From positions 1 through 64,000 of IMG/VR virus record IMGVR_UViG_3300042879_006196: a stretch of DNA of 64,000 nt; one strand, written 5' to 3'. The translations under genes and the position numbers were made by a program. This document shows positions 14,112 through 51,693 of the stretch, in pieces; the first letter of the stretch is position 1; every line of letters starts with the position of its first letter. The notes beneath the pieces are model-generated. The model did no database searches. It had not been told where the DNA came from and saw only the letters and a program-made list of their open reading frames with translations.

Positions 14112-14477
14112 ATGACATTTTTTGAAAACTTAATGATAGCACATTTTATTGGAGATTGGATTCTCCAACCTTCATCAATGGGAATACAAAAATCTTCCAA
14201 TTGGAAAATTAGATTTTTGCATTGCTTAATTTACACCGCTTGTTTTTTCTGGCTTAACTGGATTGCCTGTTTGTGGATTTTTATAACCCATTTTATCATT
14301 GACTCGTATATGCCTCTATTTTGGTTTAGAAAATTAAGAGGTGATTTTAAAACCATTGAAGAATTTAAAACTTCTTTTAACACACCTGCTGGCTTTTTTA
14401 TAAATGTTGTACTTGATCAAATTTTTCACATTATCACATTTTTGCCTGTAATTTTGTCCGTAAATTACAATAAATAA
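14112..14477 (+). CDS. DUF3307-like membrane protein
   Basis: AHFIGDW.LQ, LHC.IY, THFIID, DQ.FH motifs. Confidence 0.8.
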   Translation: MTFFENLMIAHFIGDWILQPSSMGIQKSSNWKIRFLHCLIYTACFFWLNWIACLWIFITHFIIDSYMPLFWFRKLRGDFKTIEEFKTSFNTPAGFFINVVLDQIFHIITFLPVILSVNYNK

Positions 14478-14478: not shown

Positions 14479-17400
14479 ATGATTAATACAGATTGTGTGA
14501 AAATATATGAGGAAGAATATCAGGTGAGCAAGCAGGTGAGCCATCAGCAGGTGATGGATCGGGTGATGACTCTAGTGTGGTATCAGATTCGCCACGAGGT
14601 AGAGGATCAGGTATTAAGTGAGGTGTGGCTTAAGGTGTGGTATGATTAATACAGATTGTGTGGAAGTAAAAAAACAGGCACATAATCAGCTAAGGAATCA
14701 GGTGTTGAATCACGTGCGGTATCAGGTGTTGAATCACGTGCGGTATCAGGTGCTGAATCAGGTGTGGTATCTGGGGAGGGATCAGGTGTGGGTTAAGGTG
14801 TTTAGATGATTAATACAGATTGTGTGGAGATAAAAGATTGGGGTCATATAGAGGATCACGTGGAATATCAAACTTCGATTCAGGTATCAAATGAGGTGTG
14901 GAAGCAGGTGTATCTTCATCTGAGGAATCGAATGAAGAAAGAGATGTATTTCTACTTAAGGTGGGAGGTGTGGTTTAAGGTGTGGTTTGATTAATACAGA
15001 TTGTGTGGAGATAAAAGATTGGGGTCATATATTGGATCATGTGGAATATCAAATTTCGACTCAGGTGTCAAGTGAGGTGTGGAAGCAGGTGTATTCGCAG
15101 GTGAGAAATCAAACGATGGATGAAATGTATTTCTACGAGAGAAAACAGGTGTGGCTTAAGGTGTGGTTTGATTAATACAGATTGTGTGGAGATGTATGAG
15201 ATTAAAGATCAGGTGTGGGATAAGGTGGAGTATGAGGTTTCGATTCAAGTGAGGGATCAGGTGTGGGGTTATTTGTATTCCCTCATAAGGTACGAGGTGA
15301 GGCTTAAGGTGTGGTTTGATTAATACAGATTGTGTGGAGATAAAAGCGATTAGATATCAGGAGAGAAAACAGGTATGTGATCAGGTGAGAAATCAGGTGG
15401 GGAATGAGGTGAGGAATGAGGTGTGGCATCAGGTAGAGTATCAGGTGTGGGCAAAGGTGTGGTGGTCAGGTGAGGGGAATCACTTGAGTGATCGGATTTT
15501 CAAATGATTAATACAGATTGTTTAAAGGTGAAGGTTGAAGATCAGGTGCAGAATCAGGTGTATAATCTCCTAAGGATTCATGTGAAGCTCCAGTTGGACT
15601 ATCAGGTGTGGGATCGTTTGTTTTGGGAAATGCGGTGGAAGGTGTTCAAATGATTAATACAGATTGTGTGGAGATATTTGAGATTGAAAGTAAGGCGTAT
15701 GATCAGGTTATGGAACTGGTCTATTATCAGGTTTGGGAACAGGGGTGGTCGAGGGTAAGAGTGTATATGTGTCGTGAGGTGTTCAGATGATTAATACAGA
15801 TTGTGTGGAGATATTTAACATTAAAGATCGAGTGGGGGAGCAGGTGATATTTGAGGTGAGGATTAAGGTGGTGGATAAGGTGTTGTGGAAGGTGTATGAT
15901 TGGGCGAGGGATCAGGTAAAGGGTAAGGTAAGAGTGAAGGTGTTCAGATGATTAATACAGATTGTGTGGAAGTGAAGAATCAGGTGAAGAATCAAATGAG
16001 GAATCATGTACAGTATCATGTGCAGACTCAGGTGTATGAAAAGGTAGATTATCAGGTGTGGGATAAGGTGTGGTATCTAATGAGGAATAAGGTGATAAAT
16101 GATTGATATAGATTGTGTGGAGATATTTGAGATTAGAGATCGGGTGAAAAATCAGGTGGTGGATAAGGTGTTGTGGAAGGTGTGGTATCTGGCGAGGAAT
16201 CAGGTGAGGGGTCAGGTGTATCTAAAGGTGTGGGATAAGGTGTGTGATCAAGTTGTGTGTCAGGTGTGGCTTAAGGTGCTCAAATGATTAATACAGATTG
16301 TATGGTAGTGAAGAATCAGGTGAAGAATCAGGTGTTGGATCAGGTGAGTTATCAGGTGTGGGATCAGGTGCTGTATCAGATGTGGCATCAGGTGTATCAT
16401 CACGTGAGGGATCAGGTGTGGTATCAAGTGGAGGATCAGGTGTATGATAAGGTGTGGCATCCTGTGAAATATCGGGTAAAGGGTCAGGTGTTCGATGATT
16501 AATACAGATTGTTTGAAGGTGAAACATCAATTTAAGAAAGTGGAATCTCAGGTGTGGGATCAGGTGATAGATGATTAATACAGATTGTGTTGGAGTAAAT
16601 CATAAAGTATTTTTTGAGAATGTGTCCTTTGAATTGTGGCATCAGACGAGGAATAATCTAAGGTGGCAGGTGAGGAACCAGGTGTGGTTTAAGGTGTATC
16701 TTCAGGTATGGCATAAGGTGTTCAGATGATTAATACAGATTGTGTGGAGATATTTGAGAATCGAAATCAGGTGATAACTCAGTTGAGTGATCAGGTGAGT
16801 TCGAATCTGGTGCATAGTCAGGTGTGGTTTAAGGTGTTCAGATGATTAATACAGATTGTGTGGAGATATTTGAGAATCTAAATCGGGTAGAGGGTAAGGT
16901 GAGGCATCAGGCAAGAGATCAGGTGAGTAATCATGTGTGGTATAAGTTGCGGGATAAGGTGTGGTGGGAGATGTGGTGCTACGTAAGAGTGAAGGCGTGG
17001 AGGAAAATGTTCGAATGATTAATACAGATTGTGTGGAGATGTATGATAATATTGAGTTATGGTGGAAGGTGACAGATAAAGTGTATGCTGTGGCGAGGAG
17101 TCAGGTGCAGAATCAGGTATTGTTTCATACAAAGACTCATCCTAAGGTGAAACTGAAGGTGAAAGATCAGGTATATTATGAGGTGCTCAGATGATTAATA
17201 CAGATTGTGTGGAGATATTTGAGATTGAAGATCAGGGTTGGGATCAGGTGAGTGATCAGGTGAGTGATCAGGTGGAGTATCAGGTGTGGGAGCAGGTGTG
17301 GTGGAAGGTGTGGGATCAGGTGTGGTATCAGGTGTGGTATCAGGTGTGGTATCTGGCGTGGGATAAGGCGTGGGATGAGGTGATAAATGATTAATACAGA

Positions 17401-18082
17401 TTGTGTGGAGATGTATGAGATTGAAAATCAGGTGTGGGATCAGGTGAGTGATCAGGTGGAGCATCAAGTGTGGTATCAAGTGGAGCATCCTTTGTATGCT
17501 CAGGCGAGGGATCAAGTGATGAACCAGGTGTGGCTCAAGGTGTTCAGATGATTAATACAGATTGTGTTGAGATATTTGAGATTGAAGATCAGGCGTTGGA
17601 TCAGGTGAGTGATCAGGTGGAGTGGGAGGTGTGGCATCATGTGGAATATAAGGTGTGGTATAATGTGAGTAATCAGGTGAAAAACCCAGTGTGGTTTAAG
17701 GTGTTCGTATGATTAATACAGATTGTGTGGATGTGAAGGTTGAGGATCAGATTTGGCGTCAGGTGAGTTATCAGGTGGAGTGGGATACGCGGCATCATGT
17801 GGAGGTGTGGTATAATGTGAGTAAGCAGGTGAAAAACCCAGTGTGGTTTAAGGTGTTCGTATGATTAATACAGATTGTGTGGGTGTGAAGGTTGAGGATC
17901 AGATTTGGTGTCAAGTGGAAAATCAGGTGGAGTGTCAGTTGTCGTACTGGGTATGTGATGAGGTGAGATTTGATGCGGTTGATACAGTTTGGCATGAAGT
18001 GGGGTATAAGTTGTATGATCACATGGTTTTTCCAGGTTTAACATTACCCGATTATACTGGATATGATTCAAAAAAAAGATGA
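14479..18082 (+). repeat. MINTDCV micro-ORF array, block 1 (22 units by manual count)
   Basis: Repeat (A/T)TGATTAATACAGATTGTGTG at 14479, 14642, 14806, 14987, 15168, 15316, 15504, 15650, 15787, 15948, 16099, 16284, 16495, 16571, 16726, 16842, 17015, 17191, 17387, 17548, 17709, 17861; each opens a QVW-rich ORF that ends in the next repeat, except the last (17861), which runs on into the rIIA promoter. Confidence 0.95.
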
Positions 18083-20204
18083 CTTTGTAATCGACATGAA
18101 TTCCTCATTTGCACAACGAAAGTTCTCAGTTAAAACTGAGAATCTTGCTCATTTGTTCGACATAATGAGAAATTACATTTACTCAAACAAAATTCTTGCA
18201 GTTATTAGAGAGTACTCTACAAATGCAATTGATGCAAACATAAAAAATAACTTTGCATCTAGACCAATTTCAATCACATTGCCTACGTACTTCGAACCTA
18301 CATTTTCTGTAAGAGACTATGGCGCAGGTTTGAGCGAAGAAGAAATTTTTGAAATTTATTCTAGTTATGGAGAATCCACTAAAAGAGAAAGCAATGAATA
18401 CATTGGTAATCTTGGTATTGGAAGCAAATCTGGCTTCGCTTATTCTGATTCATTTACCATTACTTCATTCCATAATGGAACAAAAAAAATCTATGAAGCT
18501 TTCATTGATGAATCACAAATTGGTACAATTGCAAAAATTCATGAAGAAAAAAATGACAGTGAAAGCGGATTGTTAATATCTATTTCTGTTAATAAAAATG
18601 ACATCAATTATTTCAAAATTGAAGCAGAAAAGTTTTTCATGTGGTGGGATGTTACACCTGAATTTATTGGTGTCCAACCTGATTTTATGTCTCAATTTTC
18701 AACATACAAAAATGAATATTCTTCTAGTATTTGTCAAATCTTTTCAAAAAGATATTCTGAAACTTCAATTTCAGTTAAAATGGGTAATATTCTTTATCCA
18801 GTTACAAATTTTGATAAAATTGATTGTGATTGGTTGAAAGGTTTGTCTGTTGTCATTAAAGTAGGGCTTGGAGAAGTAAGTCACTCCGCTTCAAGAGAAT
18901 CTCTTGAAATGAATAGTTTAACTGTAGATACAATTAATACATATCTTCAAAAAATAAGAGAGACACTTACAGCACATTTCCTGAAGCAAATTGATGATTG
19001 CAAAACACCTTGGGGCGCAATCATAGAATATCATAATATGTCTTTTTTCGCTCAACAAACGATTGGTAAAAAAATATCTTGGAAAGGTAAAACTCTATCA
19101 ACGCAGTTACCGTCTAGTTTTCAATATTGTTTCTTTGATACATACTACAAAAAATGGAAGAAAAATGTAACTGTTCGATACTCCGCTGGAGACAGTGTGG
19201 CTTTTATTTTGAATGATGGAGGTTTTCCAGCGTCACAAACTAGAGCAAGGCTTCTAGCCGCACGTGATAAACTCAACAAGACAAACCTTTACACAAGTAT
19301 CATTTACATAAAAGGTTCAATCTCAGACACAAATGATTTACTAAAAAGTGACGAATTGATTGGATCAAATTATGTCAAGCTTTCAACGGTATTAGCAATT
19401 CCTACTAAAAATAAAAGTAAAAAAGCTGTTGCTGGAAAGATTCTTGAATGGAATTCCACAACAACATTTCCATACTCTACTTGCTGGGACTCTGTAGATA
19501 TACCAGACAGTGATGAAGAAATGATTTATGTTGAGATTGAAAAATTTGTGCCTGTCATGAGCAATTTTAATAACAGTAGCCGAGCGAGGTTTTATGATCT
19601 TAAAAATTGTTTGAATTTGATTCGTGATGTGGATAATAAAGTTTTCAAAATTTACGGAGTAAAAGCTGGTCAAAAATTACCTAAAAATTTTATTAGTCTG
19701 CATGATTACATGGAAAGGATGATTGTAAAATTCATTAAAACAGACGATTTTGTTGATAGTTATGTTCAACATGCAATTAGTCAAGTTAATTTAAGAACAT
19801 CATTCTTGAGTAGTGCAAGAACTCTAATGCAAACATTTGATACTGATATAATGAACAAATTCAATGATGTAAAATGCGAAAAGCTCAAGGCAATGTTTTA
19901 CTTTACTAAGCCTATGATGAATAAATTTTATCATCTTTTGACGAACATAAAAAACATTTCATTTCATTTTCCTAAAATAACCACTGCCTTGTCAGAGTTG
20001 GATGATTTGAAAGACAAAAGATTACAAGTTTGGAATCAAAACAAAAATTATTGTTTGGAAAATTATCCAATGATTGAATTTCATTATTCTCCAAACACTA
20101 TGGCTTTGACAAAAATGTTTGAATATGTAAATTCAATTCACGCAACACAAAACACTGAGAGGCACAAAAAGCCAATCAAAATTTCATCAAAAATTAATGT
20201 TTGA
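18063..20204 (+). CDS. rIIA: rIIA-like protein (N-terminal GHKL ATPase)
   Basis: Y.NK..AVIRE...NA.DA, F.VRDYG.GLS, YG.STKR.SN..IG.LG.GSKS.FAYSDSF, S.SRESL. Confidence 0.9.
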   Translation: MIQKKDDFVIDMNSSFAQRKFSVKTENLAHLFDIMRNYIYSNKILAVIREYSTNAIDANIKNNFASRPISITLPTYFEPTFSVRDYGAGLSEEEIFEIYSSYGESTKRESNEYIGNLGIGSKSGFAYSDSFTITSFHNGTKKIYEAFIDESQIGTIAKIHEEKNDSESGLLISISVNKNDINYFKIEAEKFFMWWDVTPEFIGVQPDFMSQFSTYKNEYSSSICQIFSKRYSETSISVKMGNILYPVTNFDKIDCDWLKGLSVVIKVGLGEVSHSASRESLEMNSLTVDTINTYLQKIRETLTAHFLKQIDDCKTPWGAIIEYHNMSFFAQQTIGKKISWKGKTLSTQLPSSFQYCFFDTYYKKWKKNVTVRYSAGDSVAFILNDGGFPASQTRARLLAARDKLNKTNLYTSIIYIKGSISDTNDLLKSDELIGSNYVKLSTVLAIPTKNKSKKAVAGKILEWNSTTTFPYSTCWDSVDIPDSDEEMIYVEIEKFVPVMSNFNNSSRARFYDLKNCLNLIRDVDNKVFKIYGVKAGQKLPKNFISLHDYMERMIVKFIKTDDFVDSYVQHAISQVNLRTSFLSSARTLMQTFDTDIMNKFNDVKCEKLKAMFYFTKPMMNKFYHLLTNIKNISFHFPKITTALSELDDLKDKRLQVWNQNKNYCLENYPMIEFHYSPNTMALTKMFEYVNSIHATQNTERHKKPIKISSKINV

Positions 20205-20474
20205 ATGACTTAGTTACCAACATGCAGAAAATTTAATCATGAAGTTTTTCAATAAATTCTTCTCACTGATTCAGATTGTGTGCATGTTGGTAATTTTGCC
20301 TTTTGCATTCTTTTACTTAACTATTTTAGATTTTTTGGATTACCAAAAATCAAAAAAAATGTAACTATTCTTGAATAGTTATCGTAAATAAAATTGTATT
20401 ATAGATTGAATCTTTTATAGAATTAGTGTGTAATACATTTTTTCCAGGTTTAACAAAACAGGATTATAATTAAC

Positions 20475-21569
20475 ATGGTTGAACAATTAACACAAGAACA
20501 AATAGACAGTTTTCCACGATTCAGAGATAAGTGGACAAACATCGGACGATCCACTGGCAGAGCTGACCTTTCAGTTGTAAAGCCAATTATCAACAAAATT
20601 TATGAGCAGAAAGATCTTGAAGCTCCAAAGTACTTCTTCCATTTTGGCAATCCGATGGATATGCTCAATGGACGAGTGATTTGCAGAATGCTCAACAGTT
20701 TTGATCCAAAAAATTATCAGAAAGATACAATCAATCTTGATAATGACTTCATGCGTATCTTTGATATGACCTATCAAATGTATTCTGAACAATTCGATTT
20801 GAAATCTGCACATGGTGTGGATTGGAGCGAAGACATCAAGCTTGGAATGCTTTCACATTGCCAAAATCTTTTGAAGTCTAAAAACATGCTTGCATACAGA
20901 AAAGAACTGGAAACTGATGTTCTTTATGGCAACCATGAAGCACACAATCTGGCTTACTACGAATTCTGGGACGAATGGTTCAAATTTGACTTCTTAAAGC
21001 CAATGCATGCATTTTTTGAACTCGCTAACCATCTTGGATGGTGGTGTGCTGAAAAAGAAGTGGCATATTTGTCAGACAAACCTGATGAAGTGCACGTGGA
21101 TGAACTAGGTAGACTTCACAACACCGCAGGACCAGCTGTCAAATACAGAGATGAATTCTCAATCTACTGCATCGAAAGCCATAGCGTTCCTGCCCACGTG
21201 GTAGAGGCACCAGACACAATTACAGTTGAAGAAATTGATTCTCAAACAAACGCTGAAGTTAGAAGAATTTTTATGACACAATTTGGATTCGAAAGATATT
21301 TCCAAGAAGCAAATTGTCAAATTATTGACCAGGATTTTACTGTTGTTGATTATAACAAACAAGAATCTATGCCAAGAATGCTCGTAAAAACTAAATTTGA
21401 TGATGTGTATTTGATCGGAACTGATGGCTCCACAAATCGTGTTTACTACATGCCAATTGGTAATGTAACCACAATCAAAGAAAGATTGGGTGTGAACATC
21501 AAAACCTGTAAGCAAGCACATGAAATCATTTCAGGTGTGAAAGAATCAAATATCATTTCGCAAAGCTAA
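20475..21569 (+). CDS. DUF6745-like protein
   Basis: N-terminal LT.EQ....R.KW..IG.ST..AD; C-terminal LH...GPA..Y.D.......VP..VV..P..IT...I....NAEVRR..M...G.ERY; recognised from memory. Confidence 0.75.
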   Translation: MVEQLTQEQIDSFPRFRDKWTNIGRSTGRADLSVVKPIINKIYEQKDLEAPKYFFHFGNPMDMLNGRVICRMLNSFDPKNYQKDTINLDNDFMRIFDMTYQMYSEQFDLKSAHGVDWSEDIKLGMLSHCQNLLKSKNMLAYRKELETDVLYGNHEAHNLAYYEFWDEWFKFDFLKPMHAFFELANHLGWWCAEKEVAYLSDKPDEVHVDELGRLHNTAGPAVKYRDEFSIYCIESHSVPAHVVEAPDTITVEEIDSQTNAEVRRIFMTQFGFERYFQEANCQIIDQDFTVVDYNKQESMPRMLVKTKFDDVYLIGTDGSTNRVYYMPIGNVTTIKERLGVNIKTCKQAHEIISGVKESNIISQS

Positions 21570-21599
21570 TATGTATAATAAATAACAAGGATAAAAAAA

Positions 21600-22037
21600 A
21601 TGACAAAAACCATTAAAAAAACCAAAGCTCAGAATAACCTTTCTGAAATTCAACAATTCGCCACTAAATCTAGCAACGATTGTCGCATCATTGACAAAAT
21701 TGAAGTGGGGCAGTGCGTGAGACAAGGGGATGTTTACATCACCCGAATCGAAAACTTCTCGAAAGTGGGATGCACTAAAGCAGGGCAAAAACTTGCTCCT
21801 GGTGACACCCCTGGCTCAAGACATTTTGTAGATGCACACGTTACTACTTGGCAAAATGAAAACACTGGAAAAGTTGTGCGAAATGAAGTGGGATTCACAT
21901 GTAAAGGATTGCTCCTTGAATGCGATAGAAGCTTCAAGGTCACACACCCTGAACATGCCCATTTCTATCTCCCTGCTGGCTCTTATGAAGTGAGCTATCA
22001 AGTTAACACCAAAGAAATGGCTAGAGTACTTGATTAA
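21600..22037 (+). CDS. Conserved small partner of DUF6745-type genes
   Basis: RQGDV, LA.G...G.RH, .THPEH....LP.G.YEV..Q, terminal RV.D. Confidence 0.7.
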   Translation: MTKTIKKTKAQNNLSEIQQFATKSSNDCRIIDKIEVGQCVRQGDVYITRIENFSKVGCTKAGQKLAPGDTPGSRHFVDAHVTTWQNENTGKVVRNEVGFTCKGLLLECDRSFKVTHPEHAHFYLPAGSYEVSYQVNTKEMARVLD

Positions 22038-22078
22038 AATCTAAAAACAACACACTCACATCTTTTCCAAAAACACCG

Positions 22079-22113
22079 AAGAGGACAATTCAAATATTGT
22101 CCTCTTTATTTTT
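22079..22113 (+). terminator. Intrinsic terminator closing the DUF6745 operon
   Basis: AAGAGGACAAT...ATTGTCCTCTT followed by a T-run. Confidence 0.8.
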
Positions 22114-22164
22114 CAATTTTTGCCCGATTTTTTCCAGATTTAACAATTATTATTTATATTAAAA

Positions 22165-25100
22165 ATGATCAACACAGATTGTGCGGAAGTAAATGAAAAA
22201 GTGAATCCTATACAGCATCATGCAATTAATCAAGTACAGTATGAATTGGAGATTGAAGTTTGGGATATGGTAAAATGTAAGGTATCAGGTGAGGTAAGTT
22301 GTCAGGTGTTCGATTGATTAATACAGATTGTGTGAAAGTGGAACATCCAGTGTGGACTCAAGTGCGAGATCAGCTGTTCTCTCAGGTGCAGTGGAAGGTG
22401 TGCCATAACGTGCTGACTCAGGTGGAGTGGAAGATGCATGATCAGGTGTGGTGGAAGGTGTTCGATTGATTAATACAGATTGTGTTAAGGTGTGGGAGAA
22501 AAAGGATAAGGTGAGGGGTCAGGTGTGTTATCAAGTGATGGGTCAGGTAGAAGATCAGGTGCATGGTCCTTTGTTTCGGGAAATGTGGTGGCAGGTGTGG
22601 TTTGAGGTTTTCAAATGATAAATACAGATTGTGTGAAGGTGAGGGAGAAAAAGATTCAGGAGTGCGATCAGGTGTATGAGCAGGTGTATGAGCAGGTGTA
22701 TTGTCAGGTGAGTAATCATGTGGAGTATCAGGTGTGGGAGCAGGTGTGGTGCAAGGTATGTAAAAAAGTGTGGTTTAAGGTCTATAATGATTAATACAGA
22801 TTGTGTGGAGGTGAGGGAGAAAAAGAATCAGGCGACTGAGCAGGTGTATGAGCAGGTGTGTGAGCAGGTGGGGTGGAATGTGGAGTATCAGGTGTGGGAG
22901 CAGGTAGAAGATCAGGTGTGGGATCGTTTGTTTTGGTACTCGCGCTTTGAGGTGTTCAAATGATTAATACAGATTGTGTGGTGAAGAAGCAGGTGTGGGA
23001 GTATGTAGAAAGTCAGGTGTTGTGGAAGGTGTATGATTGGGTGAGTGAGCAGGTGAATTGGCAAGTGGAGATTCAGTTGTGGGATAAGCTGTTTGCTCAG
23101 GAAAGACATCAGGTACGGCATCAGGTAAAAGTGAAGGTGTTCAAATGATTAATACAGATTGTGTGGAAGTTGAAAGCCATGTGAAGAATCAGGGGTTTGA
23201 TCAGGTGTGGAATCAGGTGGAACTTCAGGTGTGGGGTCAGGTGTGGGATTATTTGTGGTGGAAGGTGTGGCTTGAGGTGTTCGAATGATTAATACAGATT
23301 GTGTGTATGATTGGGTGAGTGGTGATTGGGTGAGTGATCAGGTGGAGCTTCATGTGAGGAATCAAGTGCGGGGTCAGGTGTGGGGTCAGGTGTGGGATAA
23401 GGTGCGGGATCAGGTGGAGTATCAGGTGTGGGAGCAGGTGTGGTTTGAGGTGCTCAGATGATTAATACAGATTGTGTGGAAGATCAGGTGGAGTATCAGG
23501 TGGAGTATCAGGTGGAGCTTCAGAAGTGGGGTCAGGTGTGGGATGAGGTGTGGTGGAAGGTGTGGCTTGAGGTAAGTGATCAAGTAAGGGATCAGGTGTT
23601 TTATAAGGTGTGGTTTGAGGTGTTCTATGATTAATACAGATTATGTGGTAAATAAGCAGGTGTGGTGGCATGCAGAAGATCAGGTGTTTTCGAATATGCG
23701 TGATTGGGTGTGGTGGCATGTAGAAGATCAGGTGTATGATCAGGTAAGGATATTGGTGCAGATTCATGTGTGGGATCAGGTGGGGGGTCAGGTGTATGAC
23801 CAGGTGTTCTATGATTAATACAGATTGTGTGAAGGTAAAGAAGCAGGTGTGGGAGCATGTAGAAAATCAGGTGTGGTTTGAGGTGTATGATTGGGTGAGT
23901 GAGCAGGTGAATTGGCAAGTGGAGATTCAGTTGTGGGATGAGGTGTTGTATCAGGTGTTGTGGATTAAGGTGTTTAGATGATTAATACAGATTGTGTGAA
24001 GATAAAAAATCAAATGTATGATCAGGTGGAGTGGAAGGTGTATGATCAGGAGTGGTGGTATCGGGTGAGCATTCTAGTGTTGGATCAGTTGGAGTATAAG
24101 GTGTGTAATCAGGTGTGGTGGGAGGTGTATAAGGGTGTGTGGCAGGTGTTAAAATGATTAATACAGATTGTGTGGAAGATCAGGTGTGGGATCAGGTGGA
24201 GCTTCAGGTGTGTAATCATGTGTGGTATCATGTGAGGTATCAGGCGTCTCAGCAGTTGGGGGTTAAGGTGAGAGGTCAGGTGAAATACAAGGTGAGGTAT
24301 CATGTGAGAGATCAAGTGGTGTGTGAGGTGTGGTATGATTAATACAGATTGTGTCAAGGTGAGGGAGCAAGATAAGGTGTGGGATCAGGTGTGGTGGAAG
24401 GTGCTCAAATGATTAAAACAGATATTGTGAAAGTGAAACGTGAAAATCAAATGTGTTTTAAGATTTATCACAATTTGGAACAACAAGTGCACTGGAATAT
24501 ACTTTATCTGGTGAAAGCTCAAACGAAAAATAGACTTTTTGCACAGAAGAATCTGCTGGGTAGGATTGTAGATCGCGAGATCAAAAGGCGCTCAAATGAT
24601 TAATACAGATTGTGTGGTTGTGTGGAATCAGGTGAGACATCAGGTACGGCATCAGGTAAAAGTGAAGGTGTTCAAATGATTAATACAGATTGTGTGGAGG
24701 TATGTGAGATTAATCATGTATGGACTCAGGTGAATTATAAGGTGACACATCAGGTGAAGAGAGTGGCATCTCAGGTTCACTCTGAGGTGAGACATCAGGT
24801 ACGGCATCAGGTGTGGTGTGAGGTAGAGGATCAGGTGGAGTGGAATGTGTGGAATAAGGTGCTGGGTCAGGTGTGGAATCAGGTGAGGATTCAGGTGTGG
24901 TATGATTAATACAGATTGTGTGGAAGATCAGGTGTGGGATCAGGTGGAGCTTCAGGTGTGTAATCAGGTGAGGTATCAGGTGAGGTATCAGGTGAGGGTT
25001 CAGGTGTGTGATAAGGTGAGGGGGAGGTGGTGCTACGTAAGAGTGAAGGTGTTGTTTAAGGTGTTCAGATGATTAATACAGATTGTGTGGAAGATCAGGT

Positions 25101-27430
25101 GTGGGATCAGGTGGAGCTTCAGGTGTGTAATCAGGCGAGGTATCAGGTGAGGTATCAGGTGAGGGAGGAGGTGTCTGATAAGGTGAGGGGTCAGGTGAGA
25201 TATAAGGTGAGGCATCATGTGAGAGATCAGGTGGTGTGTGAGGTGTTCTATGATTAATACAGATTGTGTAAAGGTGAGGGAGCAAGATAAGGTGTGGAAT
25301 CAGGTGCAGGATCATGTGTGGTTTGAGTTGTGGTATAAGGTGCGGGATCAGGTGAAGATTGAGGTGAGGTTTCAGGTGTGGGTTCAGGTGTTCAAATGAT
25401 AAATACAGATTGTGTGGAAGTGGAAGATGATTCAAATTTGACTAAAATGAAACATGTGTTGACTCATGTGCGCGATAGGGTGGAGGTTAGGGTGTGGTTT
25501 GCGGTGTCGGCTCTTGTGGAATGTCGGTATTGGTATGAAGTAAGAGATAATGTGTTCTAATGATTAATACAGATTGTGTGGAAGTGAAACATCCAGTGTG
25601 GGGTGAGGTGAGGGAACAGGCAAGGGTTACAATAGTTTATCATTTGTGGCATCAGGTGTGGTACCAGGTTGCGTGGGATGTAGAGGATCAGGTGTTGGAT
25701 CAGGTGTGGAATCAGGTGTTCTAATGATTAATACAGATTGTGTGGTAGCGAAGAATCTGGTGCGGAATCAAATGAGGAATCATGTACAGTATCAGGTGCA
25801 GACTCAGGTGTATGAAAAGGTAGATTATCAGGTGTGGGATAAGGTGCGATGGAAGGTGTATGCTCAGGTGCGGGATAAGGTGTTTAGATGATTAATACAG
25901 ATTGTGTGGAAGTGAGGGAGCGGGATCAGGCGTGGAAAAAAGTGCAGAATCATGTGTGGAATCAGGTGCAGGATCATGTGTGGTTTGAGTTGTGGTATAA
26001 GGTGCGGGATCAGGTGAAGATTGAGGTGTGGAATAGGGTGTGGTGGAAGGTGTTCAAATGATAAATACAGATTGTGTGAAAGATCAGGTGTGGAATCAGG
26101 TGTGGAATAAGGTGTTGAATCAGGCGTGGGGTCAGGTGGAGTATCAGGTGGAGATTCAGGTGTGGGATCAGGTATGGATTCAGGTATGGAAGGTGTGTTG
26201 TAAAATACAGAATCAGGTGTGGCATGATTAATACAGATTGTGTGGATGTATGTGATAATAATTATCAGTTTTGGTATGTAGTGTCTCAGGTTCAGGTTGA
26301 GGCAAATCAGGTGGAGATTCAGGTGTTTAGACAAGTGAGGAAACTAACGTGGGCTCAGGTAAGATATCAGGTGACACACAAGGTAATTGATCAGGTGTGG
26401 TATGATTAATACAGATTGTGTGAAAGATCAGGTGTGGAATAAGGCGCTGGATCAGAAGTGGGGTCAGGTGAGGAAACAGGTGTGTGAGCATGTATGGGAT
26501 CAGGTGTGGAATAAGGTGTGGGATCGTTTGTTTTGGGTAAGATTCAAGGTGAAGTATCAGGTGTGGCATGATTAATACAGATTGTGTGAAAGTGAGTGAG
26601 TGTGATAAGGTGCAGGATCAGGTGAGACAGCAGATGCGGGATCAGGTGAAAGATCAGGCGTTGAAGGGGTTTATTCAGGTATATTGGCAGGTGAGTAATC
26701 AGGTGGAGTATAAGGTGTGGGAGAAGGTGATCAAACAGGTACGACTTCAGGTGTGGTATGATTAATACAGATTGTGTGAAAGAGCAGGTGTGGAATAAGG
26801 TGCTGGGTCAGGTGAGATACAAGGTGAGGTATCAGGTAGAGGATAAGGTGGAGTGGAAGGTGTTAAATCAGGTATATGATAAGGTGTTTAAATTGAATTA
26901 TAAGGTGTTGAAAAAGGTGTTCAGATGATTAATACAGATTGTATAGAGATATTTGAGATTGAAGATCAGGCGTTGGATCAGGTGAGTGATCAGGTGGAGA
27001 TGGAGGTGAGGTATCAGGTGAGATATAAGGTGAGGCATCATGTGAGAGATCAGGTGTGGTGTGAGGTGTTCTATGATTAATACAGATTGTATAGAGATAT
27101 TTGAGATTGAAGATCAGGCGTTGGATCAGGTGAGTGATCAGGTGGAGATGGAGGTGTGGCATCATGTGTTGGATCAAGTTGTGGGTGAGGTGTGGTATCA
27201 GGTGTGGTATCAGGTGAATTATCAGGTGTGGTATGATTAATACAGATTGTGTGAAAGTGAAACGTGAAGATCAATTGTGTTTTAAGATTTATTATAATTT
27301 CGATCATAAAATGCACTGGGAGATGATGTATCAAGCGCATTACAAACCCCAATATCAAGCAGAATATTATTTATGCTGTAATATTTACAATAAAGGATGG
27401 AAGCAGATAACAGAGCAGATATTCAAATGA
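22165..27430 (+). repeat. MINTDCV micro-ORF array, block 2 (32 units by manual count)
   Basis: Repeats from 22165 to 27233 at about 75-230 bp spacing; first ATG lies directly behind the promoter at about 22126-22160. Confidence 0.95.
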
Positions 27431-27968
27431 TGAATCACTTCAAAGATTCCTTTTTTATGAAACATCCCACTGGACTCCGCGACAAAAAATGATCCCTCTT
27501 TAATGCAGAATAAAACACCTTTTCATCACCCTTTTTGTACCCCACACCTGACCAAAAACAAGGCTTCACACACACTAATTTATATGCCTTTCTGTTCATT
27601 TTTTACTCTATGAATTCCTATATGAACACACAATCTGAAACACGATCTCTATATCCCTAATACAATTAAGATACAATTAAAAAATCACATATTCATTATG
27701 CATTTTTTTCACCTTCCACCACCTCAAATGATAAAAAAAAAATTACACAAGATATATATGATTTTTTTCAATTTTTTCTACTCTATGAAAAATTAATGAG
27801 ATTTTTTGTCAAATCATTTTTCATCTCTGAAAAAATCATATCATTTTCTCTTTCTATTTTTTTCTGATTTTCGCCCGATTTTTCCTCATCAATTTTGCCC
27901 GATTTTTTCCAGTTTTAACATTTTCTTTTTATAATGTTTCCAAGACAAATTTCGTAGAATGTAGTGGT

Positions 27969-30900
27969 ATGATTAATATACATAATGTAGAATTGAATGA
28001 CAAGGATTACATAAAAATAAAAGATTTCATTTCTTCCCATGTAAATGAAAATGTCTGGTTTCGTGTGAATGATCAAGTGAGGAAATATTTCTGCCATAAA
28101 CACAGAGGTAAAATTTATAAGAGGATGTTCAAATGATTAATATAGATTGTGTGAAGGTATTTGATATGAAACAGGTGTGGGATGAGCTGACTTTTCAAGT
28201 GAGTGATCCAGTGGATAAGCATGTGCTGTCTGACGTGTGGTATCAAGTGAGGGATAAGGTGTGGATTCAGGTACGATTTAAGGTGTGGATTAGGGTGTTG
28301 TTATGGTTAATACAGATTGTGTGAAGGTGAGGGTGCTGAATCAGGTGAGTGATCAGGTGCGGGATCAAGTGAACTATCCAGAGGCAAATCATGTGCTGTC
28401 TGACGTGTGGCATCAAGTGAGGGATCAGGTGTGGATTCAGGTACGATTTAAGGTGTGGATTAGGGTGTTATGGTTAATACAGATTGTGTGAAGGTATTTA
28501 ACCTAATACAAGCGTGGGATGAACTAACAACTTATCAGGTAAGGTATTCAGTGAAATATCATGTGCTGCATAATCTCTGGTATGAAGTGGGGGCTGGGGT
28601 GAAGATTGAGGTGAGGCATAAGGTGTGGTTTGATTAATACAGATTGTTTGAAGTAAAAGTGATTAGATATCAGGTAAGTGATAAGTTGTGGGAGTTGGTG
28701 ATCAGACAGGTATGGAATCAGGTGAGGTATAATGGTCGGTGGCATCAGGTAGAGGGGAGGGTGCGGGATCGGTTGTTCAAATGATTAATACAGATTGTGT
28801 GGAAGTGAATTATAGGGGGTGGATTCAGGTACGATTTAAGGTGTGGTTTGAGGTGAGAGATCGGGTGTGGCTTGAGGTAAGTGAACATCCAGTGTGGAGT
28901 CAAATTTTTTTCCATCAGGTGTTTGAAAAGGTGGAGTGCGAAGTGTGGTATGATTAATATAGATTATGTGAGGGTGAGGAATCAGGTGGGTGAGCAGGTG
29001 AGCTGTCAGGTGTGGAATCAGGTGTTTGAGCATTTAGAAGATCAGGTAGAGTATCAAGTGTATAATCAGATTTTGTCTGAGTTGCATGATCAGTTGTATT
29101 ATAAGGACTGGGAGGTGTGTTATAAAATACGGCAAAAGGTGTGGTATGATTAATACAGATTGTGTGAAAGTGGAGAATCATGGTTGTTGGCAGTTTAGGG
29201 ATCAGGTGTGGTATCAAGTGGAGCAACAGGTGTGGCACAAGGTGTCTAATGGGGTTCGGGATAGGGTGTGGATTAAGGTGTTCAGATGATTAATACAGAT
29301 TGTGTGAAGGTATTTGAACTAAATCAATTGTGGAATCAAGTGAGTGATCAGGTGGAGTGGAAGGTGCGTGATGAGGTAGAGTATAAGGTGTGGCTTCAGG
29401 TAAGATACAAGGTGTGGGATCAGGTGCAGTTTTGGGTAAGATTCAAGGTGAAGTATCAGGTGTGGCATGATTAATACAGATTGTGTGGAAGTGAAACATC
29501 CAGTGTGGACTCAGGTGCAGAATCAGGTATATTGGCAGGTGAGTAAACAGGCATGTCATAAGGTGGAGTGGAAGGTGTGGCATAAGGTGTGTAGTGGGGT
29601 GCGGGAATGGGTTGTGTATCAGGTGTGGGATCGGGTTGTGTATCTAACGTTAAATGATTAATACAGATTGCGTGAAGGTATGTGAGATTAATCATGTATG
29701 GACTCAGGTGAATTATAAGGTGACACATCAGGTGAAAAGAGTGGCATCTCAGGTTCGCTTTGAGGTGATGAGTCAGGTGTGGGATCAGGTGTATTGGATG
29801 ATGTGGCAAAAGGTGGTGTGGTATGATTAATACAGATTGTGTGGAAGTGGAACATAAAGTGTTGGAGACGATGTGGTATCATATGTGGGAAAAGGTGTGC
29901 TATGGGCTGATATTTCAGGTATGTAGTGAAGTGAGGCTTAAAGTGAGGCTTAAGGTTTTTGTTTGAGGTGTGGTATGATTAATACAGATTGTGTGGAGAT
30001 GGTGCGTCCAGTGTGGACTCAGGTTCGAAATCAACTGTTTACTCAGGTGCAGAATCAGGTAGATCATAAGGTGAGGGCTCAGGTGTTCTTGAACGTGTGG
30101 TCTAAGGTGTGGGATCAGGGGTGGTATCAGGCGTGGGATAAGGTGATAAATGATTAATACAGATTTTGTGGAAGTGAAAAATCAAATGTGGGGTGAGGTG
30201 AGGGATCATGCGTGGTTGAAGGTGTGGTATCTGGCGAGGAATCAGGTGAGGAACCAGGTAAATGATCAGGTAAGTGGTGAGGTGATTAGTCTGCTTGTGT
30301 ATCAGGTGTGGCATCAGGTGTTGTATCAGTTGACTGATATGGTTTGGAATAAGGTGATAAATGATTAATACAGATTGTGTGGAAGTGAAAAATCATCCAC
30401 ATATGCAGGTAAGACAGCAGATGAGACACAGGGCGTGGTTTCAGGTGTGGAATCAGTTGGTTCCTATGGTTTGTGATCATGTGTGGAAGCACATGTATAT
30501 TCAGGTGCAAATTCAAGTGTTGGATAAAGTGATGTATGGATTGTATGAAGAAGGTGAACAATCAGGTGTGGCATGATTAATACAGATTATGTGGGCTTAC
30601 TCGGAGCGGCAAAAACTCAGGCTCAAAATGAAATTAACAGTATTGTGCAACTTGAAGTGTGGGAGAAGGTGATCAGTCAGGCATGGCTTAACACGTGGCA
30701 AAAGGTGTGGTATGATTAATACAGATTGTGTGAAAGTGGGGAATCCAGTGGGGAATCAGTTGGGGTTTGAGGTGAATTTTCAGGCGAGGTGGCAAGTGAT
30801 GTCTCATGTGGAATATGTGGTGCGGCATGATGTGAGGGATCAGCTGGAGTGCAAAGTTTGGTATATGTGGTGGAAGGTGTGCAAATGATTAATACAGATT

Positions 30901-33178
30901 GTGTGAAAGTGGAAAATCAAGTGTTTAATGAGGTGCAGAATCAGGTGTGGTGGAAGGTACATGCTCAGGTGTTCCGTAAGCTGAGAGGTAAGGAATGGTT
31001 GGCTGAGTTGTGGCAACAGAAAACATATGTTGTCACGTATCAGAATCAGGTTCTACTTAAAGTAAAACTTCAGGTGTGGTATGATTAATACAGATTGTGT
31101 GGAATTGTATAATGAGGTTTCGAATCAAGTGAGGGATCAGGCGTGGGCTCATGGACTTCAGGCGTGGTGGCAAGTGAGGAATAAGATAAGGTATCAGCCT
31201 TGGCATCAAATTAGTAGGAAGGTGAGAAAACAGGTATGGTATGAGGTGTGGTATGATTAATACAGATTGTGTGAAAGTGTATAATGAGGTGCAGAATCAA
31301 GTGAGGGATCATGTGTGGATTAATACAGATTGTGTTAATACAGATTATGTTGAATTGTATTATGAGGTTTCGATTCAAGTGAGGGATCAGGTGTGGTATC
31401 AGGCGTGGGATAAGGTTTGGGATCAAGTGAGGAATAAGATGAAGTATCAGGCTTGGCATCAAATTAGTAGGAAGGTTAGAAAACAGGTATGGTTTGAGGT
31501 GTAGTATGATTAATACAGATTTTGTGAAAGTGGAAATTTGGGTGTGGGATCAGCTAAAGAATCATGTGAAAAATGAATTTAGTAGTGAAGTGTGGCAACA
31601 GGTAAATGTTAGGATGTGCGATCAGGTGTGGGAGAAGGTGATCAGACAGGTACGATATAAGGTGTGGTATGATTAATACAGATTGTGTGAAGATATATAA
31701 TAGTAAAAATCCAATGATTGATCATATGTGGGATCTAGTGACAACCCAATCGTTTTATGAGTTTTTGAATTATGTGCTTTTCAAGGTAAAGAGACAGATA
31801 TGGAATAAGGTGTGGCTTGAGGTGTTCAAATGATTAATACAGATTGTGTGGAATTGAGCCATCACGCGCTGGATCAAGTGAGCAACAATACGCGGTATCA
31901 GCTGGAGTGGAAGGTATGGGCTCATGTGGATCATGCGGTAAAACAGATTGGTTTGCCGTTTAAGGTAAAGTTGCAGGTATGGAATAAGGTGATAAATGAT
32001 TAATACAGATTGTGTAAGGAATAAGATGAAGCAGAAGCACTTGGATTTTAGACATCAAACGCAAAAGTATGTATGGGCTAACTTTATATTAGGGCTTGAG
32101 TATCGTGTGAGACTTAATGTCTGTAGTAAGCTTACGAGTCAGATATATTATCAGGTGAGTGTATATATTTATAATAAGGTGTATGATGATTAATACAGAT
32201 TGTGTGCAGATAAATGATGATGAATATCAGGTAAAAAGTCAGAAGTATAAACATATATCTAATGAGATGTATCTTGAGGTGTGGTATGAGATGTCTCAAA
32301 AAGTATTATATTTTTCTGTGCGTGAGTTGTGCATTAAGGTGTTTAGATGATTAAAATAGATTGTGTGGAGATTAAGGTTCAACATCACATTTGTCTTGTG
32401 CACATTCATGTTTCTAATCAGGCTTATCAGGTGTGGGACAAGAATTGTAAAGGAGTGTGTTTTCCAAGGCGTCAGTTGTGGTTTGAGGTGTTTAGATGAT
32501 TAAAACAAATTGTGTGGAGATTAAGGTTCAAGATCAGATTTGGTTTGTGGATCATTATTTGTCCAATGAAATGTGGTGTCAGGCTTTGAACAATACAGTG
32601 CTTTGGGCAATTCCTAATGTGGTAATTTATAATGTGCGCGATAAAGCTTGGATCAAGGTGTTTAGATGATTAACACAGATTGTGTGAGAGTGGACAGTCT
32701 TGAAATAAAGCATGAAGTTGTTTTTGAGATGAGGAATAAAGTGTGGAATCAAATATATTATCATGTGTCTTGTAAGGTTTGGAGGCTGGTAAAGCTTCAG
32801 GTGTTTGGGTGTTCAGATGATTAATACAGATCGTGTGGATTTGAAAAATCATGATAATCTACATTATCATCTTACTAATTCACCAAGATGGTATGTGTGG
32901 GATCAAATTAATCTTCAAGTGAGGAATCATGTTTCTAAGGTAAGGTTTAAGTTGTGGGATGAGATGTTAAAATGATTAATACAGACTGTGTGAATATAAG
33001 GAATGGTGAAAAAATCCAAATGGATTTGCAGAACCATGTGGATATAGTTGATATCCATTCTGTTCGAAATTCTATTTATTATCAAGTAAGAAGATTAAGT
33101 AATGTAACTTTGATAAGATATAAATTACAAAAGATTTTTTTTGATTATTTGTCTTATGATTTATGTGGGATATTGTGA
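27969..33178 (+). repeat. MINTDCV micro-ORF array, block 3 (30 units by manual count)
   Basis: Repeats from 27969 to 32972; promoter at about 27903-27935; first and last units are the most diverged. Confidence 0.95.
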
Positions 33179-33350
33179 AAAAAAGTGGGAATCAGATTGT
33201 GTTAGATTGTGGTAAATTTATGGATAAAAAGTGGGAATTAGATTGTGTTAGATTGTGGTAAATTTATGGATAAAAAGTGGGAATTAGATTGTGTTAGATT
33301 GTGGTAAATTTATGGATAAAAAGTGGGAATTAGATTGTGTTAGATTGTGT
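33179..33350 (+). repeat. 46-bp tandem repeat, about 3.6 copies
   Basis: GTGGGA at 33185, 33231, 33277 and 33323; each unit carries two AGATTGTG. Confidence 0.92.
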
Positions 33351-37422: not shown

Positions 37423-37441
37423 CAGATTGTGTGTATATTAA

Positions 37442-51519: not shown

Positions 51520-51693
51520 TCACGAAGATATTGATTACGAAGAATTATTTAATCTTAGCGAAGAAGAATTATTCTCTTTGATTCAAATTTGCGAAATTGG
51601 TTTATTAAGTATTTTTGCATGGGAATAACCCCCTCCAAAGGGGAGCCAGCCCGTTTTTTCCAGATTTAACAGATTGTGTTTATATTAGATTGT

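What the first reader, a model, noticed from the sequence alone, without database searches (positions are those of the whole stretch)
15948..29756. Array units are mosaics: 75-85 nt patches are copied between distant units
Seen: 15989-16070 equals 25765-25846 (82 nt, 1 mismatch, about 10 kb apart and across rIIA). 24698-24778 equals 29676-29756 (81 nt, 1 mismatch, different blocks). 25292-25366 equals 25954-26028 (75 nt, identical). 26925-27008 equals 27073-27156 (84 nt). Flanks differ in each case. Whole-unit tandem duplicates also occur (14806/14987 and 28133/28303). Inference: ongoing gene conversion or recombinational shuffling generates new peptides, in the manner of antigenic variation. 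The CAGGTG microrepeats may serve as crossover points.
Basis: partly seen in the sequence, partly recalled or inferred. Interest (0 to 1): 0.82.

Follow-up and report, generated by a model that had tools for sequence, protein, structure and literature searches.

The report
Recombining mini-gene array in lake phage
A giant lake-water phage carries about 85 back-to-back mini-genes for short repeat peptides that have clearly swapped pieces with one another, so near-identical phage strains hold very different peptide sets; what the peptides do is still unknown.

Summary
All four quoted patches are in the sequence as described. They belong to a network of 31 shared patches of 40 nt or more that touches 36 of 84 units. 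Chance predicts 0.3 unit pairs sharing an exact 24-mer; 45 are seen.

The object is 85 co-oriented, translationally coupled mini-genes of median 57 aa, in three blocks around rIIA and a DUF6745 gene of a 347-kb lake phage. Each unit has the head MINTDCVE and a body of four-residue x-Q-V-x repeats.

Breakpoints are sharp. W52 is W53's 5' part plus W41's 3' part. A strain about 99% identical in ordinary genes shares only 55 colinear units, 18 of them altered by patches, chimeras or in-frame indels.

The units are coding. The reading frame has no stop in 4,727 codons, and every offset is a multiple of 3. A second lineage keeps Q-V with different codons.

The same repeat forms the centre of long DUF6745 proteins. 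That is an unreported link.

"Antigenic variation" is only partly supported. There is no expression site, and array pieces are letter-identical in three lake runs.

Function is unknown. My best guess is a fast-turnover family of small early accessory proteins.

The parts
14479..18082 (+). Array block 1: units W1-W22, mini-ORFs with the head ATGATTAATACAGATTGTGTGGA (MINTDCVE) and a body of 12-nt / 4-aa x-Q-V-x modules. It follows the DUF3307 gene directly.
   Evidence: every unit is open from its head to the next head. The stop overlaps the next start as ATGA or ATGATTAA. No head matches on the minus strand.
22165..27430 (+). Array block 2: units W23-W54.
   Evidence: It is preceded by a hairpin plus T-run at 22078-22107 and a promoter-like element at about 22110-22164.
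27969..33178 (+). Array block 3: units W55-W85. The last units (W79-W85) have few Q-V modules.
   Evidence: It is preceded by a 539-nt spacer that carries the same promoter-like element (about 27890-27945).
15989..16070 (+). Patch in W10 shared with W45 (25765-25846), 82 nt with 1 mismatch, lying across rIIA. W10's first 47 nt are instead closest to W12.
24676..24778 (+). 5' part of W39 shared with W65 (29654-29756), 103 nt with 3 mismatches. The 3' parts are unrelated.
25250..25399 (+). W42, a two-parent chimera. Nt 1-57 match W36 (24335-24391, 2 mismatches). Nt 43-117 match W46 (25954-26028, 0 mismatches).
   Evidence: 101 of 101 informative columns fit one breakpoint.
26925..27080 (+). W52, a two-parent chimera. 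Nt 1-84 are identical to W53 (27073-27156). Nt 90-156 match the W41 tail (25191-25257, 2 mismatches).
   Evidence: 64 of 64 informative columns, P < 0.00005. The same unit is found 100% identical in an independent assembly (R44).
17548..17712 (+). W20: the head part resembles W52/W53 of block 2 and the tail resembles W21. In the sister strain a 45-nt internal patch is replaced by sequence also found in unit R55.
28630..28780 (+). W59, a pseudo-unit with an in-frame stop after 8 codons, followed by repeat-like sequence up to the next head.
20475..21569 (+). DUF6745 gene (364 aa) between the arrays. It has the N-terminal and C-terminal domains of the family but none of the tetrapeptide repeats that long family members carry between them.
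18063..20204 (+). rIIA-like gene (713 aa, HATPase_c_3) that separates blocks 1 and 2.
12029..13171 (+). rIIB-like gene upstream of the arrays.
   Evidence: phrog_609, E = 7e-60.
14112..14477 (+). DUF3307 membrane-protein gene. Its promoter-like element at 14087 is the nearest one upstream of block 1.

Best explanation
The region is a tandem multigene family of about 85 real, translated mini-genes in a 347-kb lake phage.

Unit anatomy:
- Each unit encodes a peptide of about 57 residues, predicted to be one long helix.
- The peptide has a conserved head (MINTDCVE), a body of four-residue repeats (variable - Q/K/E/H - V - variable) and a conserved tail.
- The units are read one after another from long transcripts. 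The 10-nt start of each head (ATGATTAATA) holds the start codon. It also holds stop codons for the two other frames, so a neighbour ends there in either of those frames.

How the family evolves (homologous and short-homology recombination between misaligned units):
- Crossovers at heads add and remove whole units.
- Crossovers or template switches inside bodies make two-parent chimeras.
- Short conversion tracts paste 40-100 nt patches into otherwise unchanged units.
- Slippage adds or removes repeat modules.

Selection keeps the frame open and keeps the Q-V scaffold. The two variable positions of each tetrad are left free or favoured to change. Strains that are about 99% identical elsewhere therefore carry very different peptide repertoires.

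Shown: the anatomy, the coding signal, the mosaicism, the strain differences, and the homology of the repeat to the central repeat of DUF6745 proteins.

Inferred:
- The recombination pathway.
- That the arrays are single transcription units.
- That the peptides are early accessory proteins, functionally tied to the adjacent repeat-less DUF6745 protein, that act in phage-host conflict.
For: Anatomy:
- 85 heads, all on the + strand; junctions are ATGA (38) or ATGATTAA (36).
- No copy of the phage's 25-nt gene-start element inside the arrays, and only one weak terminator-like hairpin (6 pairs, 30449-30464).

Coding:
- 0 stops in 4,727 frame-0 codons, against 446 and 514 in the other frames and about 387 expected from composition.
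- 6% of possible point changes would create a stop.
- All 31 patch offsets are multiples of 3, and only 2 of the 9 non-zero offsets are multiples of 12.
- The indels seen in the strain alignments are 3, 6, 12, 15 or 24 nt.
- An independent lineage (L015/L016) keeps the Q-V peptide repeat but encodes it as CAAGTC (86 times) with no CAGGTG.

Selection:
- Replacements between strains hit variable positions in 43 of 1,381 codons, and Q/V scaffold positions in 4 of 541 (odds ratio 4.3, P = 0.0015).
- Overall pN/pS is 1.12, against roughly 0-0.37 in flanking genes.

Mosaicism.

Turnover between strains and samples.

Not an assembly artefact: the chimeric units W20, W28, W35, W41 and W52 recur at 99-100% identity in independent assemblies.

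Structure: AlphaFold2 gives one helix over residues 4-61, pLDDT 88.

DUF6745 link:
- A profile of the units finds 1,022 proteins. The top hits are 300-600-aa proteins with an N-domain, [DN]QV[WRGS] repeats and DUF6745.
- Arrays flank a repeat-less DUF6745 gene in two lineages.
- Repeat-bearing DUF6745 genes sit in prophage early or accessory regions.
Against: - There is no direct evidence of transcription or translation. The only 'RNA' run holding the sequence is probably DNA.
- pN/pS near 1 is also what a functionless sequence would show.
- The arrays' synonymous divergence (0.010) is below that of most flanking genes (about 0.01-0.09). Diversifying selection therefore cannot be told from relaxed selection.
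- More distant phages with repeat-less DUF6745 genes (L018-L021) have no Q-V arrays, so the association is not universal.
- The DUF6745 fold has no solved relative, so the functional part is inference only.
- AlphaFold2 tends to call repeats helical. The hydrophobic moment peaks at 90 degrees rather than 100 degrees.
Confidence: 0.65

Rival explanations
1. Neutral 'coding minisatellite'. The units are a selfishly expanding repeat, perhaps derived from a DUF6745 repeat region, with no function. The mosaicism is only the normal behaviour of tandem repeats in a recombination-proficient phage.
For: - pN/pS of 1.12 between strains.
- About a third of the units are strain-specific.
- Codons are homogeneous within a lineage, as expected from recent amplification.
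- Occasional pseudo-units exist: W59 and R5.
Against: - Only 1 of 85 units has a premature stop, although 6% of point changes create one.
- All offsets and indels keep the frame.
- The Q/V scaffold positions are protected relative to the variable positions.
- The peptide repeat is kept with different codons in a second lineage.
- Start/stop coupling is kept at 74 of 84 junctions.
Confidence: 0.15
2. A DNA- or RNA-level element. The array works through its roughly 230 CAGGTG (or roughly 400 AGGTG, Shine-Dalgarno-like) motifs or its extreme G-over-C skew, for example as binding sites, a ribosome sponge or recombination hot spots. The ORFs are incidental.
For: - CAGGTG occurs at 15.5 per kb in the arrays against 0.08 per kb elsewhere.
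- GC skew is about +0.6.
- Codon choice is opposite to the rest of the genome: GTG 78% vs 22%, CAG 82% vs 13%.
- The head contains the reverse complement of the phage's gene-start element core.
Against: - The L015/L016 arrays have 0 CAGGTG, 0 AGGTG and a skew of only 0.23, yet the same Q-V peptide repeat and the same ATGATTAA coupling.
- Long DUF6745 proteins also use CAAGTY.
- The strict open frame and the multiple-of-3 offsets that are not multiples of 12 are not expected for a DNA motif array.
Confidence: 0.07
3. A programmed cassette system like pilE/pilS or vlsE. The units are donors that are copied at high frequency into an expressed gene (the DUF6745 gene), or are switched within a clone.
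For: - Segmental, non-reciprocal patches occur between units.
- The arrays flank a gene whose relatives carry exactly this repeat.
Against: - The DUF6745 gene has no repeats and is 99.8% identical in the sister strain.
- All units have their own start codons.
- No reverse transcriptase was seen among the window ORFs of 300 aa or more that were scanned; the 300-aa ORF at 2556-3458 has no Pfam match.
- The substitution spectrum is not adenine-specific.
- Array pieces are identical across lake runs of 2020-2024.
Confidence: 0.05
4. Assembly artefact. The mosaics are mis-joins made by a short-read assembler in a repetitive region.
For: - The window is a metagenome assembly.
- Logan contigs break every 200-500 nt in the array.
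- One contig (L014) shows a different junction.
Against: - The chimeric units recur at 99-100% identity in assemblies from other samples and pipelines (R, L011, L014).
- They also recur as database proteins from other assemblies.
- [Inference] The patches (40-107 nt) are likely shorter than typical short-read lengths (read lengths were not checked), and the unique flanks are covered by letter-identical contigs in three further runs.
Confidence: 0.03
5. RiPP precursor library. The units are precursor peptides with a conserved leader and hypervariable core, as for prochlorosins, processed by an enzyme encoded elsewhere.
For: - Many tandem small ORFs with a conserved N-terminus and a nearly invariant Cys6 (77 of 85) plus a variable body.
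Against: - The conserved N-terminal part is only 8 residues.
- No modifying enzyme was seen in the window among the ORFs scanned.
- The body is a regular helix-forming repeat that is shared with a large non-RiPP protein family.
Confidence: 0.05

Closest known systems
Central tetrapeptide-repeat region of DUF6745 (PF20530) proteins of phages and prophages
   Same: The same four-residue repeat, [DN]-Q-V-[WRGSE], of variable copy number. A profile of the units hits these proteins at E down to 1e-47. The arrays lie next to a DUF6745 gene in two lineages.
   Different: In those proteins the repeat is an internal segment of one 300-600-aa protein. Here it is cut into about 85 free-standing ORFs, each with its own head, start and stop, and the local DUF6745 protein has no repeat. 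No paper in the searched library mentions DUF6745.
Multigene families diversified by segmental gene conversion (Borrelia vls, Neisseria pilS/pilE, Plasmodium var, trypanosome VSG). Comparison from general knowledge.
   Same: Mosaic paralogs with short, sharply bounded shared tracts, and chimeras whose parents are far apart.
   Different: There is no single expression site, no silent cassettes and no evidence of within-clone switching. All units appear to be co-expressed.
Hyperplastic or accessory regions of T4-like and jumbo phages, near the rII genes: clusters of small early genes that differ between close relatives. Comparison from general knowledge.
   Same: The location beside rIIA and rIIB, the small co-oriented ORFs, and high turnover between strains that are otherwise about 99% identical.
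   Different: Such regions normally hold unrelated ORFans. Here 85 paralogs of one repeat family fill 14 kb.
Prochlorosin-type RiPP precursor libraries of cyanobacteria. Comparison from general knowledge.
   Same: Many paralogous short ORFs with a conserved N-terminus and a variable remainder.
   Different: The 'leader' is only 8 residues, the core is a regular repeat, and no maturase is seen.
Diversity-generating retroelements of phages
   Same: A phage-encoded means of varying a protein sequence.
   Different: No reverse transcriptase or template/variable repeat pair was seen in the window. The changes are not adenine-directed, and the variation is by exchange of existing segments.

Membership tests
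Cassette-based antigenic variation system (pilE/pilS, vlsE type) | One expressed locus plus promoterless, start-less silent cassettes | tested here: not met
   84 of the 85 units begin with ATG (78) or TTG (6); the exception (TGG) is the head nested inside W74. The units end at the next head, and no distinct expression site exists.
Cassette-based antigenic variation system (pilE/pilS, vlsE type) | Segmental, non-reciprocal transfer of short tracts between copies | tested here: met
   There are 31 patches, 8 of them internal. W20/R18, W28/R25 and W32/R29 differ by short tracts whose alternative versions or fragments occur elsewhere in the array; only the R18 tract has a long (38-nt) match, to R55.
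Cassette-based antigenic variation system (pilE/pilS, vlsE type) | High-frequency switching within a clonal population | tested here: inconclusive
   Only fragmented contigs could be laid. They show window-identical pieces in runs of 2020, 2023 and 2024. Single-molecule data are needed.
DUF6745 (PF20530) protein family | Presence of the DUF6745 domain | tested here: not met
   The units have no Pfam, PHROG or NCBIfam match. They share only the repeat that lies outside the Pfam domain.
DUF6745 (PF20530) protein family | Tetrapeptide x-Q-V-x repeat as in the central region of long members | tested here: met
   Profile positions 8-51 of the unit alignment match 2-7 stretches in each of the top hits.
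Diversity-generating retroelement | Reverse transcriptase plus template/variable repeat pair with adenine-specific changes | tested here: not met
   No reverse transcriptase was seen among the window ORFs of 300 aa or more that were scanned; the 300-aa ORF at 2556-3458 has no Pfam match. Strain differences are AG 28, CT 20, AT 13, GT 11, AC 3. The rest of the 347-kb genome was not available.
RiPP precursor array | Leader peptide recognised by a co-encoded maturase; modified core | not testable with these tools
   No maturase was found among the scanned ORFs of the window. The conserved N-terminus is only 8 aa. Peptide chemistry is unknown.
Tandem multigene family evolving by unequal crossing-over and gene conversion | Head-to-tail paralogs, copy-number change between close relatives, chimeric members, incongruent 5' and 3' relationships | tested here: met
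   85 vs 73 units; 30 and 18 strain-specific units. Chimeras are shown. 11 of 12 close pairs are close in one half only.

The most novel reading that the evidence does not exclude
The arrays are a virus-encoded, recombination-driven library of free-standing copies of the DUF6745 repeat helix. About 85 co-expressed variants act in trans, as binders, decoys or partners of the repeat-less DUF6745 protein, against a variable host or rival-phage target. Unit shuffling is the phage's way of generating new specificities without a reverse transcriptase. In effect this would be a 'polyclonal' peptide repertoire in a phage.
Probability: 0.2. Interest if true: 0.9.

Novelty: new variant of a known kind. 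Interest (0 to 1): 0.72.

Why it matters
Three reasons.

- **Scale and rate.** The array fills about 14 kb of the 347-kb contig. It changes far faster than the rest of the genome: about a third of its units differ between strains that are about 99% identical elsewhere. That makes it a natural marker of micro-diversity and of recombination rates in uncultured lake phages.

- **A lead on DUF6745.** The array links an uncharacterised but widespread phage and prophage family (DUF6745, with its variable tetrapeptide-repeat stalk) to a second genetic format, free-standing mini-genes. This gives a concrete handle for asking what that repeat does.

- **A possible new route to diversity.** If the peptides are active, this would be a case of a virus maintaining a large, recombining repertoire of small proteins. 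Such a route is distinct from diversity-generating retroelements and from tail-fibre cassette exchange.

The junction design may also interest people who study small-protein genes. One short head supplies the start codon and the stops for the other two frames.

Tried and rejected
- **GenBank phages.** Nucleotide and protein searches with rIIA, an 8-kb array piece and one unit gave no near relative. Only distant rIIA homologues at 26-33% identity were found.
- **Family libraries.** Pfam, PHROGs, NCBIfam and PADLOC gave nothing for the units.
- **IMG/VR pattern scan.** It found only the source contig itself.
- **Word-index protein search with one unit.** Only 4 hits. The exhaustive profile search was needed to see the DUF6745 link.
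- **RNA evidence.** The one 'RNA-Seq' run is probably DNA and holds only 5-6% of the words. Transcription is therefore untested.
- **Read laying.** Logan contigs break at every repeat, so structural heterogeneity within a sample could not be read. Most 'joints' have sides of 21-35 nt and are repeat artefacts.
- **Fold search of the DUF6745 model.** No PDB match at E <= 0.001, so no functional lead from structure.
- **Genome scan with the DUF6745 alignment.** It was repeated with one repeat-bearing protein.
- **SD-sponge, E-box or Chi-like reading of CAGGTG.** Considered and rejected, because the L015 lineage lacks the motif.
- **Literature.** Five searches found nothing on DUF6745 or on such arrays.
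- **Crossover-point claim.** Not testable, because the motif recurs every 12 nt.

Full report
**What is there**

The window is part of IMGVR_UViG_3300042879_006196, a 347-kb phage contig. No GenBank phage is close to it. Runs that hold the sequence are lake-water metagenomes.

Between 14.5 and 33.2 kb I find 85 copies of the head ATGATTAATACAGATTGTGTGGA, all on the + strand and none on the minus strand. One of the 85, W75, is a duplicated head nested inside W74.
- Each head opens an ORF of 8-83 codons (median 57) that runs exactly to the next head.
- In 38 junctions the stop is the TGA of ATGA. In 36 it is the TAA of ATGATTAA. The head therefore supplies the start codon and also the stops for the two other frames.
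- The units form three blocks: 14479-18082 (W1-W22), 22165-27430 (W23-W54) and 27969-33178 (W55-W85).
- The blocks are interrupted by an rIIA-like gene, a DUF6745 gene and a 145-aa ORF. They are preceded by an rIIB-like gene and a DUF3307 gene.
- Each product starts MINTDCVE, with Cys6 in 77 of 85 units. It continues with four-residue repeats: x, then Q/K/E/H, then V, then x. It ends in KVFR or QVWYD.
- AlphaFold2, run with an alignment of 26 units, gives one helix over residues 4-61 at pLDDT 88.

**The observation**

An all-against-all search finds 31 patches of 40 nt or more, with few mismatches, in 29 unit pairs. These involve 36 of 84 units.
- 19 patches are anchored at the head, so the 5' part is shared and the 3' part differs.
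- 4 are anchored at the tail and 8 are internal.
- None covers a whole unit.
- 8 pairs are neighbours, where 0.68 would be expected by chance. 11 pairs are more than 10 units apart, and 6 cross rIIA.

Chance is excluded. 45 pairs share an exact 24-mer beyond the head, against 0.3 after shuffling the 12-nt modules. The longest exact match is 75 nt, against at most 31 nt.

**Tree or breakpoints**

I compared 60-nt 5' and 3' segments of every pair. Of 12 pairs close (88% or more) in one segment, only W35/W41 is close in both.

Alignments of three units show clean switches.
- W52 equals W53 for 84 nt, then equals the W41 tail.
- W42 is the W36 head plus the W46 body.
- W20 is a W53-like head plus the W21 tail.
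- W28 combines W33 and W38.

A single-breakpoint permutation test gives P < 0.00005 for five trios and 0.002 for a sixth. W52 fits at 64 of 64 informative columns. Gap columns were counted singly, which inflates the counts but not the pattern.

A breakpoint-free duplication tree is rejected.

**Not an artefact**

Independent assemblies contain the same chimeric units at 99-100% identity:
- Ga0315901_10002108, here called R.
- ENA ERZ27280167, locus L011.
- JGI 3300042503, locus L014.

Logan contigs of three other lake runs match pieces of the array letter for letter.

**Comparison with a sister strain**

R (27.9 kb) is collinear with window 4865-35212.
- Ordinary genes are 97.5-100% identical, with pN/pS mostly below 0.3.
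- The arrays differ sharply: 85 against 73 units.
- Only 55 pairs are collinear. 37 of these are 97% identical or better and 18 are altered.
- 30 units occur only in the window and 18 only in R.

The altered pairs show the events directly.
- W20/R18 differ at 14 positions inside a 45-nt tract whose R version also occurs in R55.
- W28/R25 and W32/R29 have similar tracts.
- R15 is the W3 head plus the W5 tail, at another array position.
- R55 is the W67 head plus the W68 tail.
- Indels are 3, 6, 12, 15 or 24 nt.

The position after W41 has four different successors in four assemblies. These include a junction to W20-like, W21 and W22 of block 1 in L014.

Proteins from further samples are new recombinants.
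- P0002 is the W63 head plus the R6 tail.
- P0144 is the W74 head plus the W5 tail, which crosses blocks.

**Are the units genes?**

The evidence says yes.
- Frame 0 has no stop in 4,727 codons. The other + frames have 446 and 514, and composition predicts about 387.
- 6% of all possible point changes would make a stop. Only W59 (nonsense) and R5 (frameshift) are broken.
- All 31 patch offsets are multiples of 3, and only 2 of the 9 non-zero offsets are multiples of 12.
- Between strains, replacements fall on the variable positions in 43 of 1,381 codons and on the Q/V scaffold in 4 of 541 (P = 0.0015).

The decisive point comes from a separate lineage (L015/L016). Its units have the head MINVKNK and the tail NTRND. 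They carry the same D-Q-V-W repeats and the same ATGATTAA coupling. There Q-V is encoded as CAAGTC 86 times and never as CAGGTG.

The peptide, not the DNA hexamer, is what is conserved. By inference, the CAGGTG richness, the GC skew of +0.6 and the odd codon usage of the window's arrays are by-products of amplifying one module.

Overall pN/pS between strains is 1.12. I cannot separate relaxed from diversifying selection at the variable positions.

**Link to DUF6745**

A profile of 26 units, searched against 1.84 billion representative proteins, finds 1,022 hits.
- The best hits are 300-600-aa proteins built as an N-terminal domain, then a long run of [DN]QV[WRGS] tetrads, then DUF6745.
- The window's own DUF6745 protein has both end domains but no tetrads.
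- In L015/L016 a repeat-less DUF6745 gene is likewise flanked by mini-gene arrays on both sides.
- More distant repeat-less homologues (L018-L021) lack such arrays.
- Repeat-bearing DUF6745 genes occur in many bacterial genomes. In Paraburkholderia the gene lies next to an integrase and a YqaJ recombinase. In Ruegeria it lies next to orphan methylases. These look like prophage early or accessory regions.
- The DUF6745 model is confident (pLDDT 91) but has no PDB relative. The best viral match is the DUF6745 protein of Microcystis phage LMM01.
- No paper in the library mentions DUF6745.

**Expression context (inferred)**

The phage's ordinary genes each carry a near-invariant 25-nt element, TTAACACAATCTGATTATAATAGAT, directly before the ATG. 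There are 45 copies in the window and none inside the arrays.
- Blocks 2 and 3 are each preceded by another shared promoter-like element.
- Block 2 also follows a hairpin terminator.
- Inside the arrays the scan finds only one weak terminator-like hairpin (30449-30464).

The blocks are therefore probably long polycistronic units read by termination-reinitiation. No RNA data could be obtained.

**Verdict**

The mosaicism is real and is produced by recombination among tandem paralogs: unequal crossing-over, short conversion tracts and module slippage. It operates much faster than point mutation.

It is not shown to be programmed, and it lacks the architecture of antigenic-variation systems. Array pieces are unchanged in lake runs dated 2020, 2023 and 2024.

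The function is unknown. I think the most likely reading is a fast-turnover family of small helical early proteins, related to and probably working with the DUF6745 protein, in phage-host conflict.

Noticed in passing
window 12004-63786 (e.g. 38524, 49211, 56415): A near-invariant 25-nt element, TTAACACAATCTGATTATAATAGAT, sits directly before the ATG of 45 genes on the + strand (2 on the minus strand). The 9-nt spacing between TTAACA and TATAAT is not sigma-70-like. It looks like a phage-specific promoter that yields leaderless or near-leaderless mRNAs.
   Followed up: partly
window, every unit head; also 37417-37441 and 51666-51690: The unit head contains CAGATTGTGT, the reverse complement of the core ACACAATCTG of that gene-start element. 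A variant element with the direct form (TTAACAGATTGTGTGTATATTAA followed by ATG) precedes the gene at 37442. The head may derive from promoter sequence, or may share a binding factor with it.
   Followed up: no
window 33180-33349: 3.7 tandem copies of a 46-nt unit that contains AGATTGTGTTAGATTGTGG lie immediately after the last array unit (99% match). The sequence is iteron-like and its role is unknown.
   Followed up: partly
L014:3300-3840 vs window 25257 and 17548-18039: A contig from another sample joins W41 (block 2) directly to W20-like, W21 and W22 (block 1). This is consistent with a tandem duplication of, or a rearrangement spanning, the 7.7-kb W20-W41 segment that includes rIIA.
   Followed up: partly
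window 31253-31504 (W74); R61: W74 holds an internal partial head duplication (…WINTDCVNTDYV…). The sister strain has one more 15-nt copy (NTDCV). This is micro-slippage of the head itself.
   Followed up: no
window 28133-28491 (W56, W57): The heads of the following units (W57 at 28303, W58 at 28470) read ATGGTT instead of ATGATT and so lose the built-in TGA and TAA stops. The ORFs of W56 and W57 therefore run 21 nt into the next unit. This shows how the head normally insulates frames.
   Followed up: no
L020:112-2263: A more distant phage with a repeat-less DUF6745 gene has a tandem run of ORFs of about 60 aa starting MIK/MIN, several ending in ND (i.e. ATGATTAA-type junctions), but without Q-V repeats. 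This suggests a broader class of coupled mini-gene arrays.
   Followed up: no
window 27431-27968: The 539-nt spacer between blocks 2 and 3 is C-rich on the + strand, unlike the arrays. It ends in the element TTTGCCCGATTTTTTCCAG(T/A)TTTAACA that also precedes block 2 (22110-22145).
   Followed up: partly
window 3475-4080, 6433-7545, 8361-9869, 11127-11993, 45135-46010, 49236-49940: Accessory genes in the window include a DenV-like pyrimidine-dimer glycosylase, an ATP-dependent DNA ligase, a nicotinamide phosphoribosyltransferase, a Mom-like protein, an ArdC-N plus zincin peptidase protein (anti-restriction-like) and an RlaP-like nucleotidyltransferase.
   Followed up: partly
run X19 laid on window 25999 and 26083: A diverged relative in an aquatic sample differs from the window by a 12-nt insertion and a 12-nt deletion, each one repeat module, in units W46/W47.
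   Followed up: no
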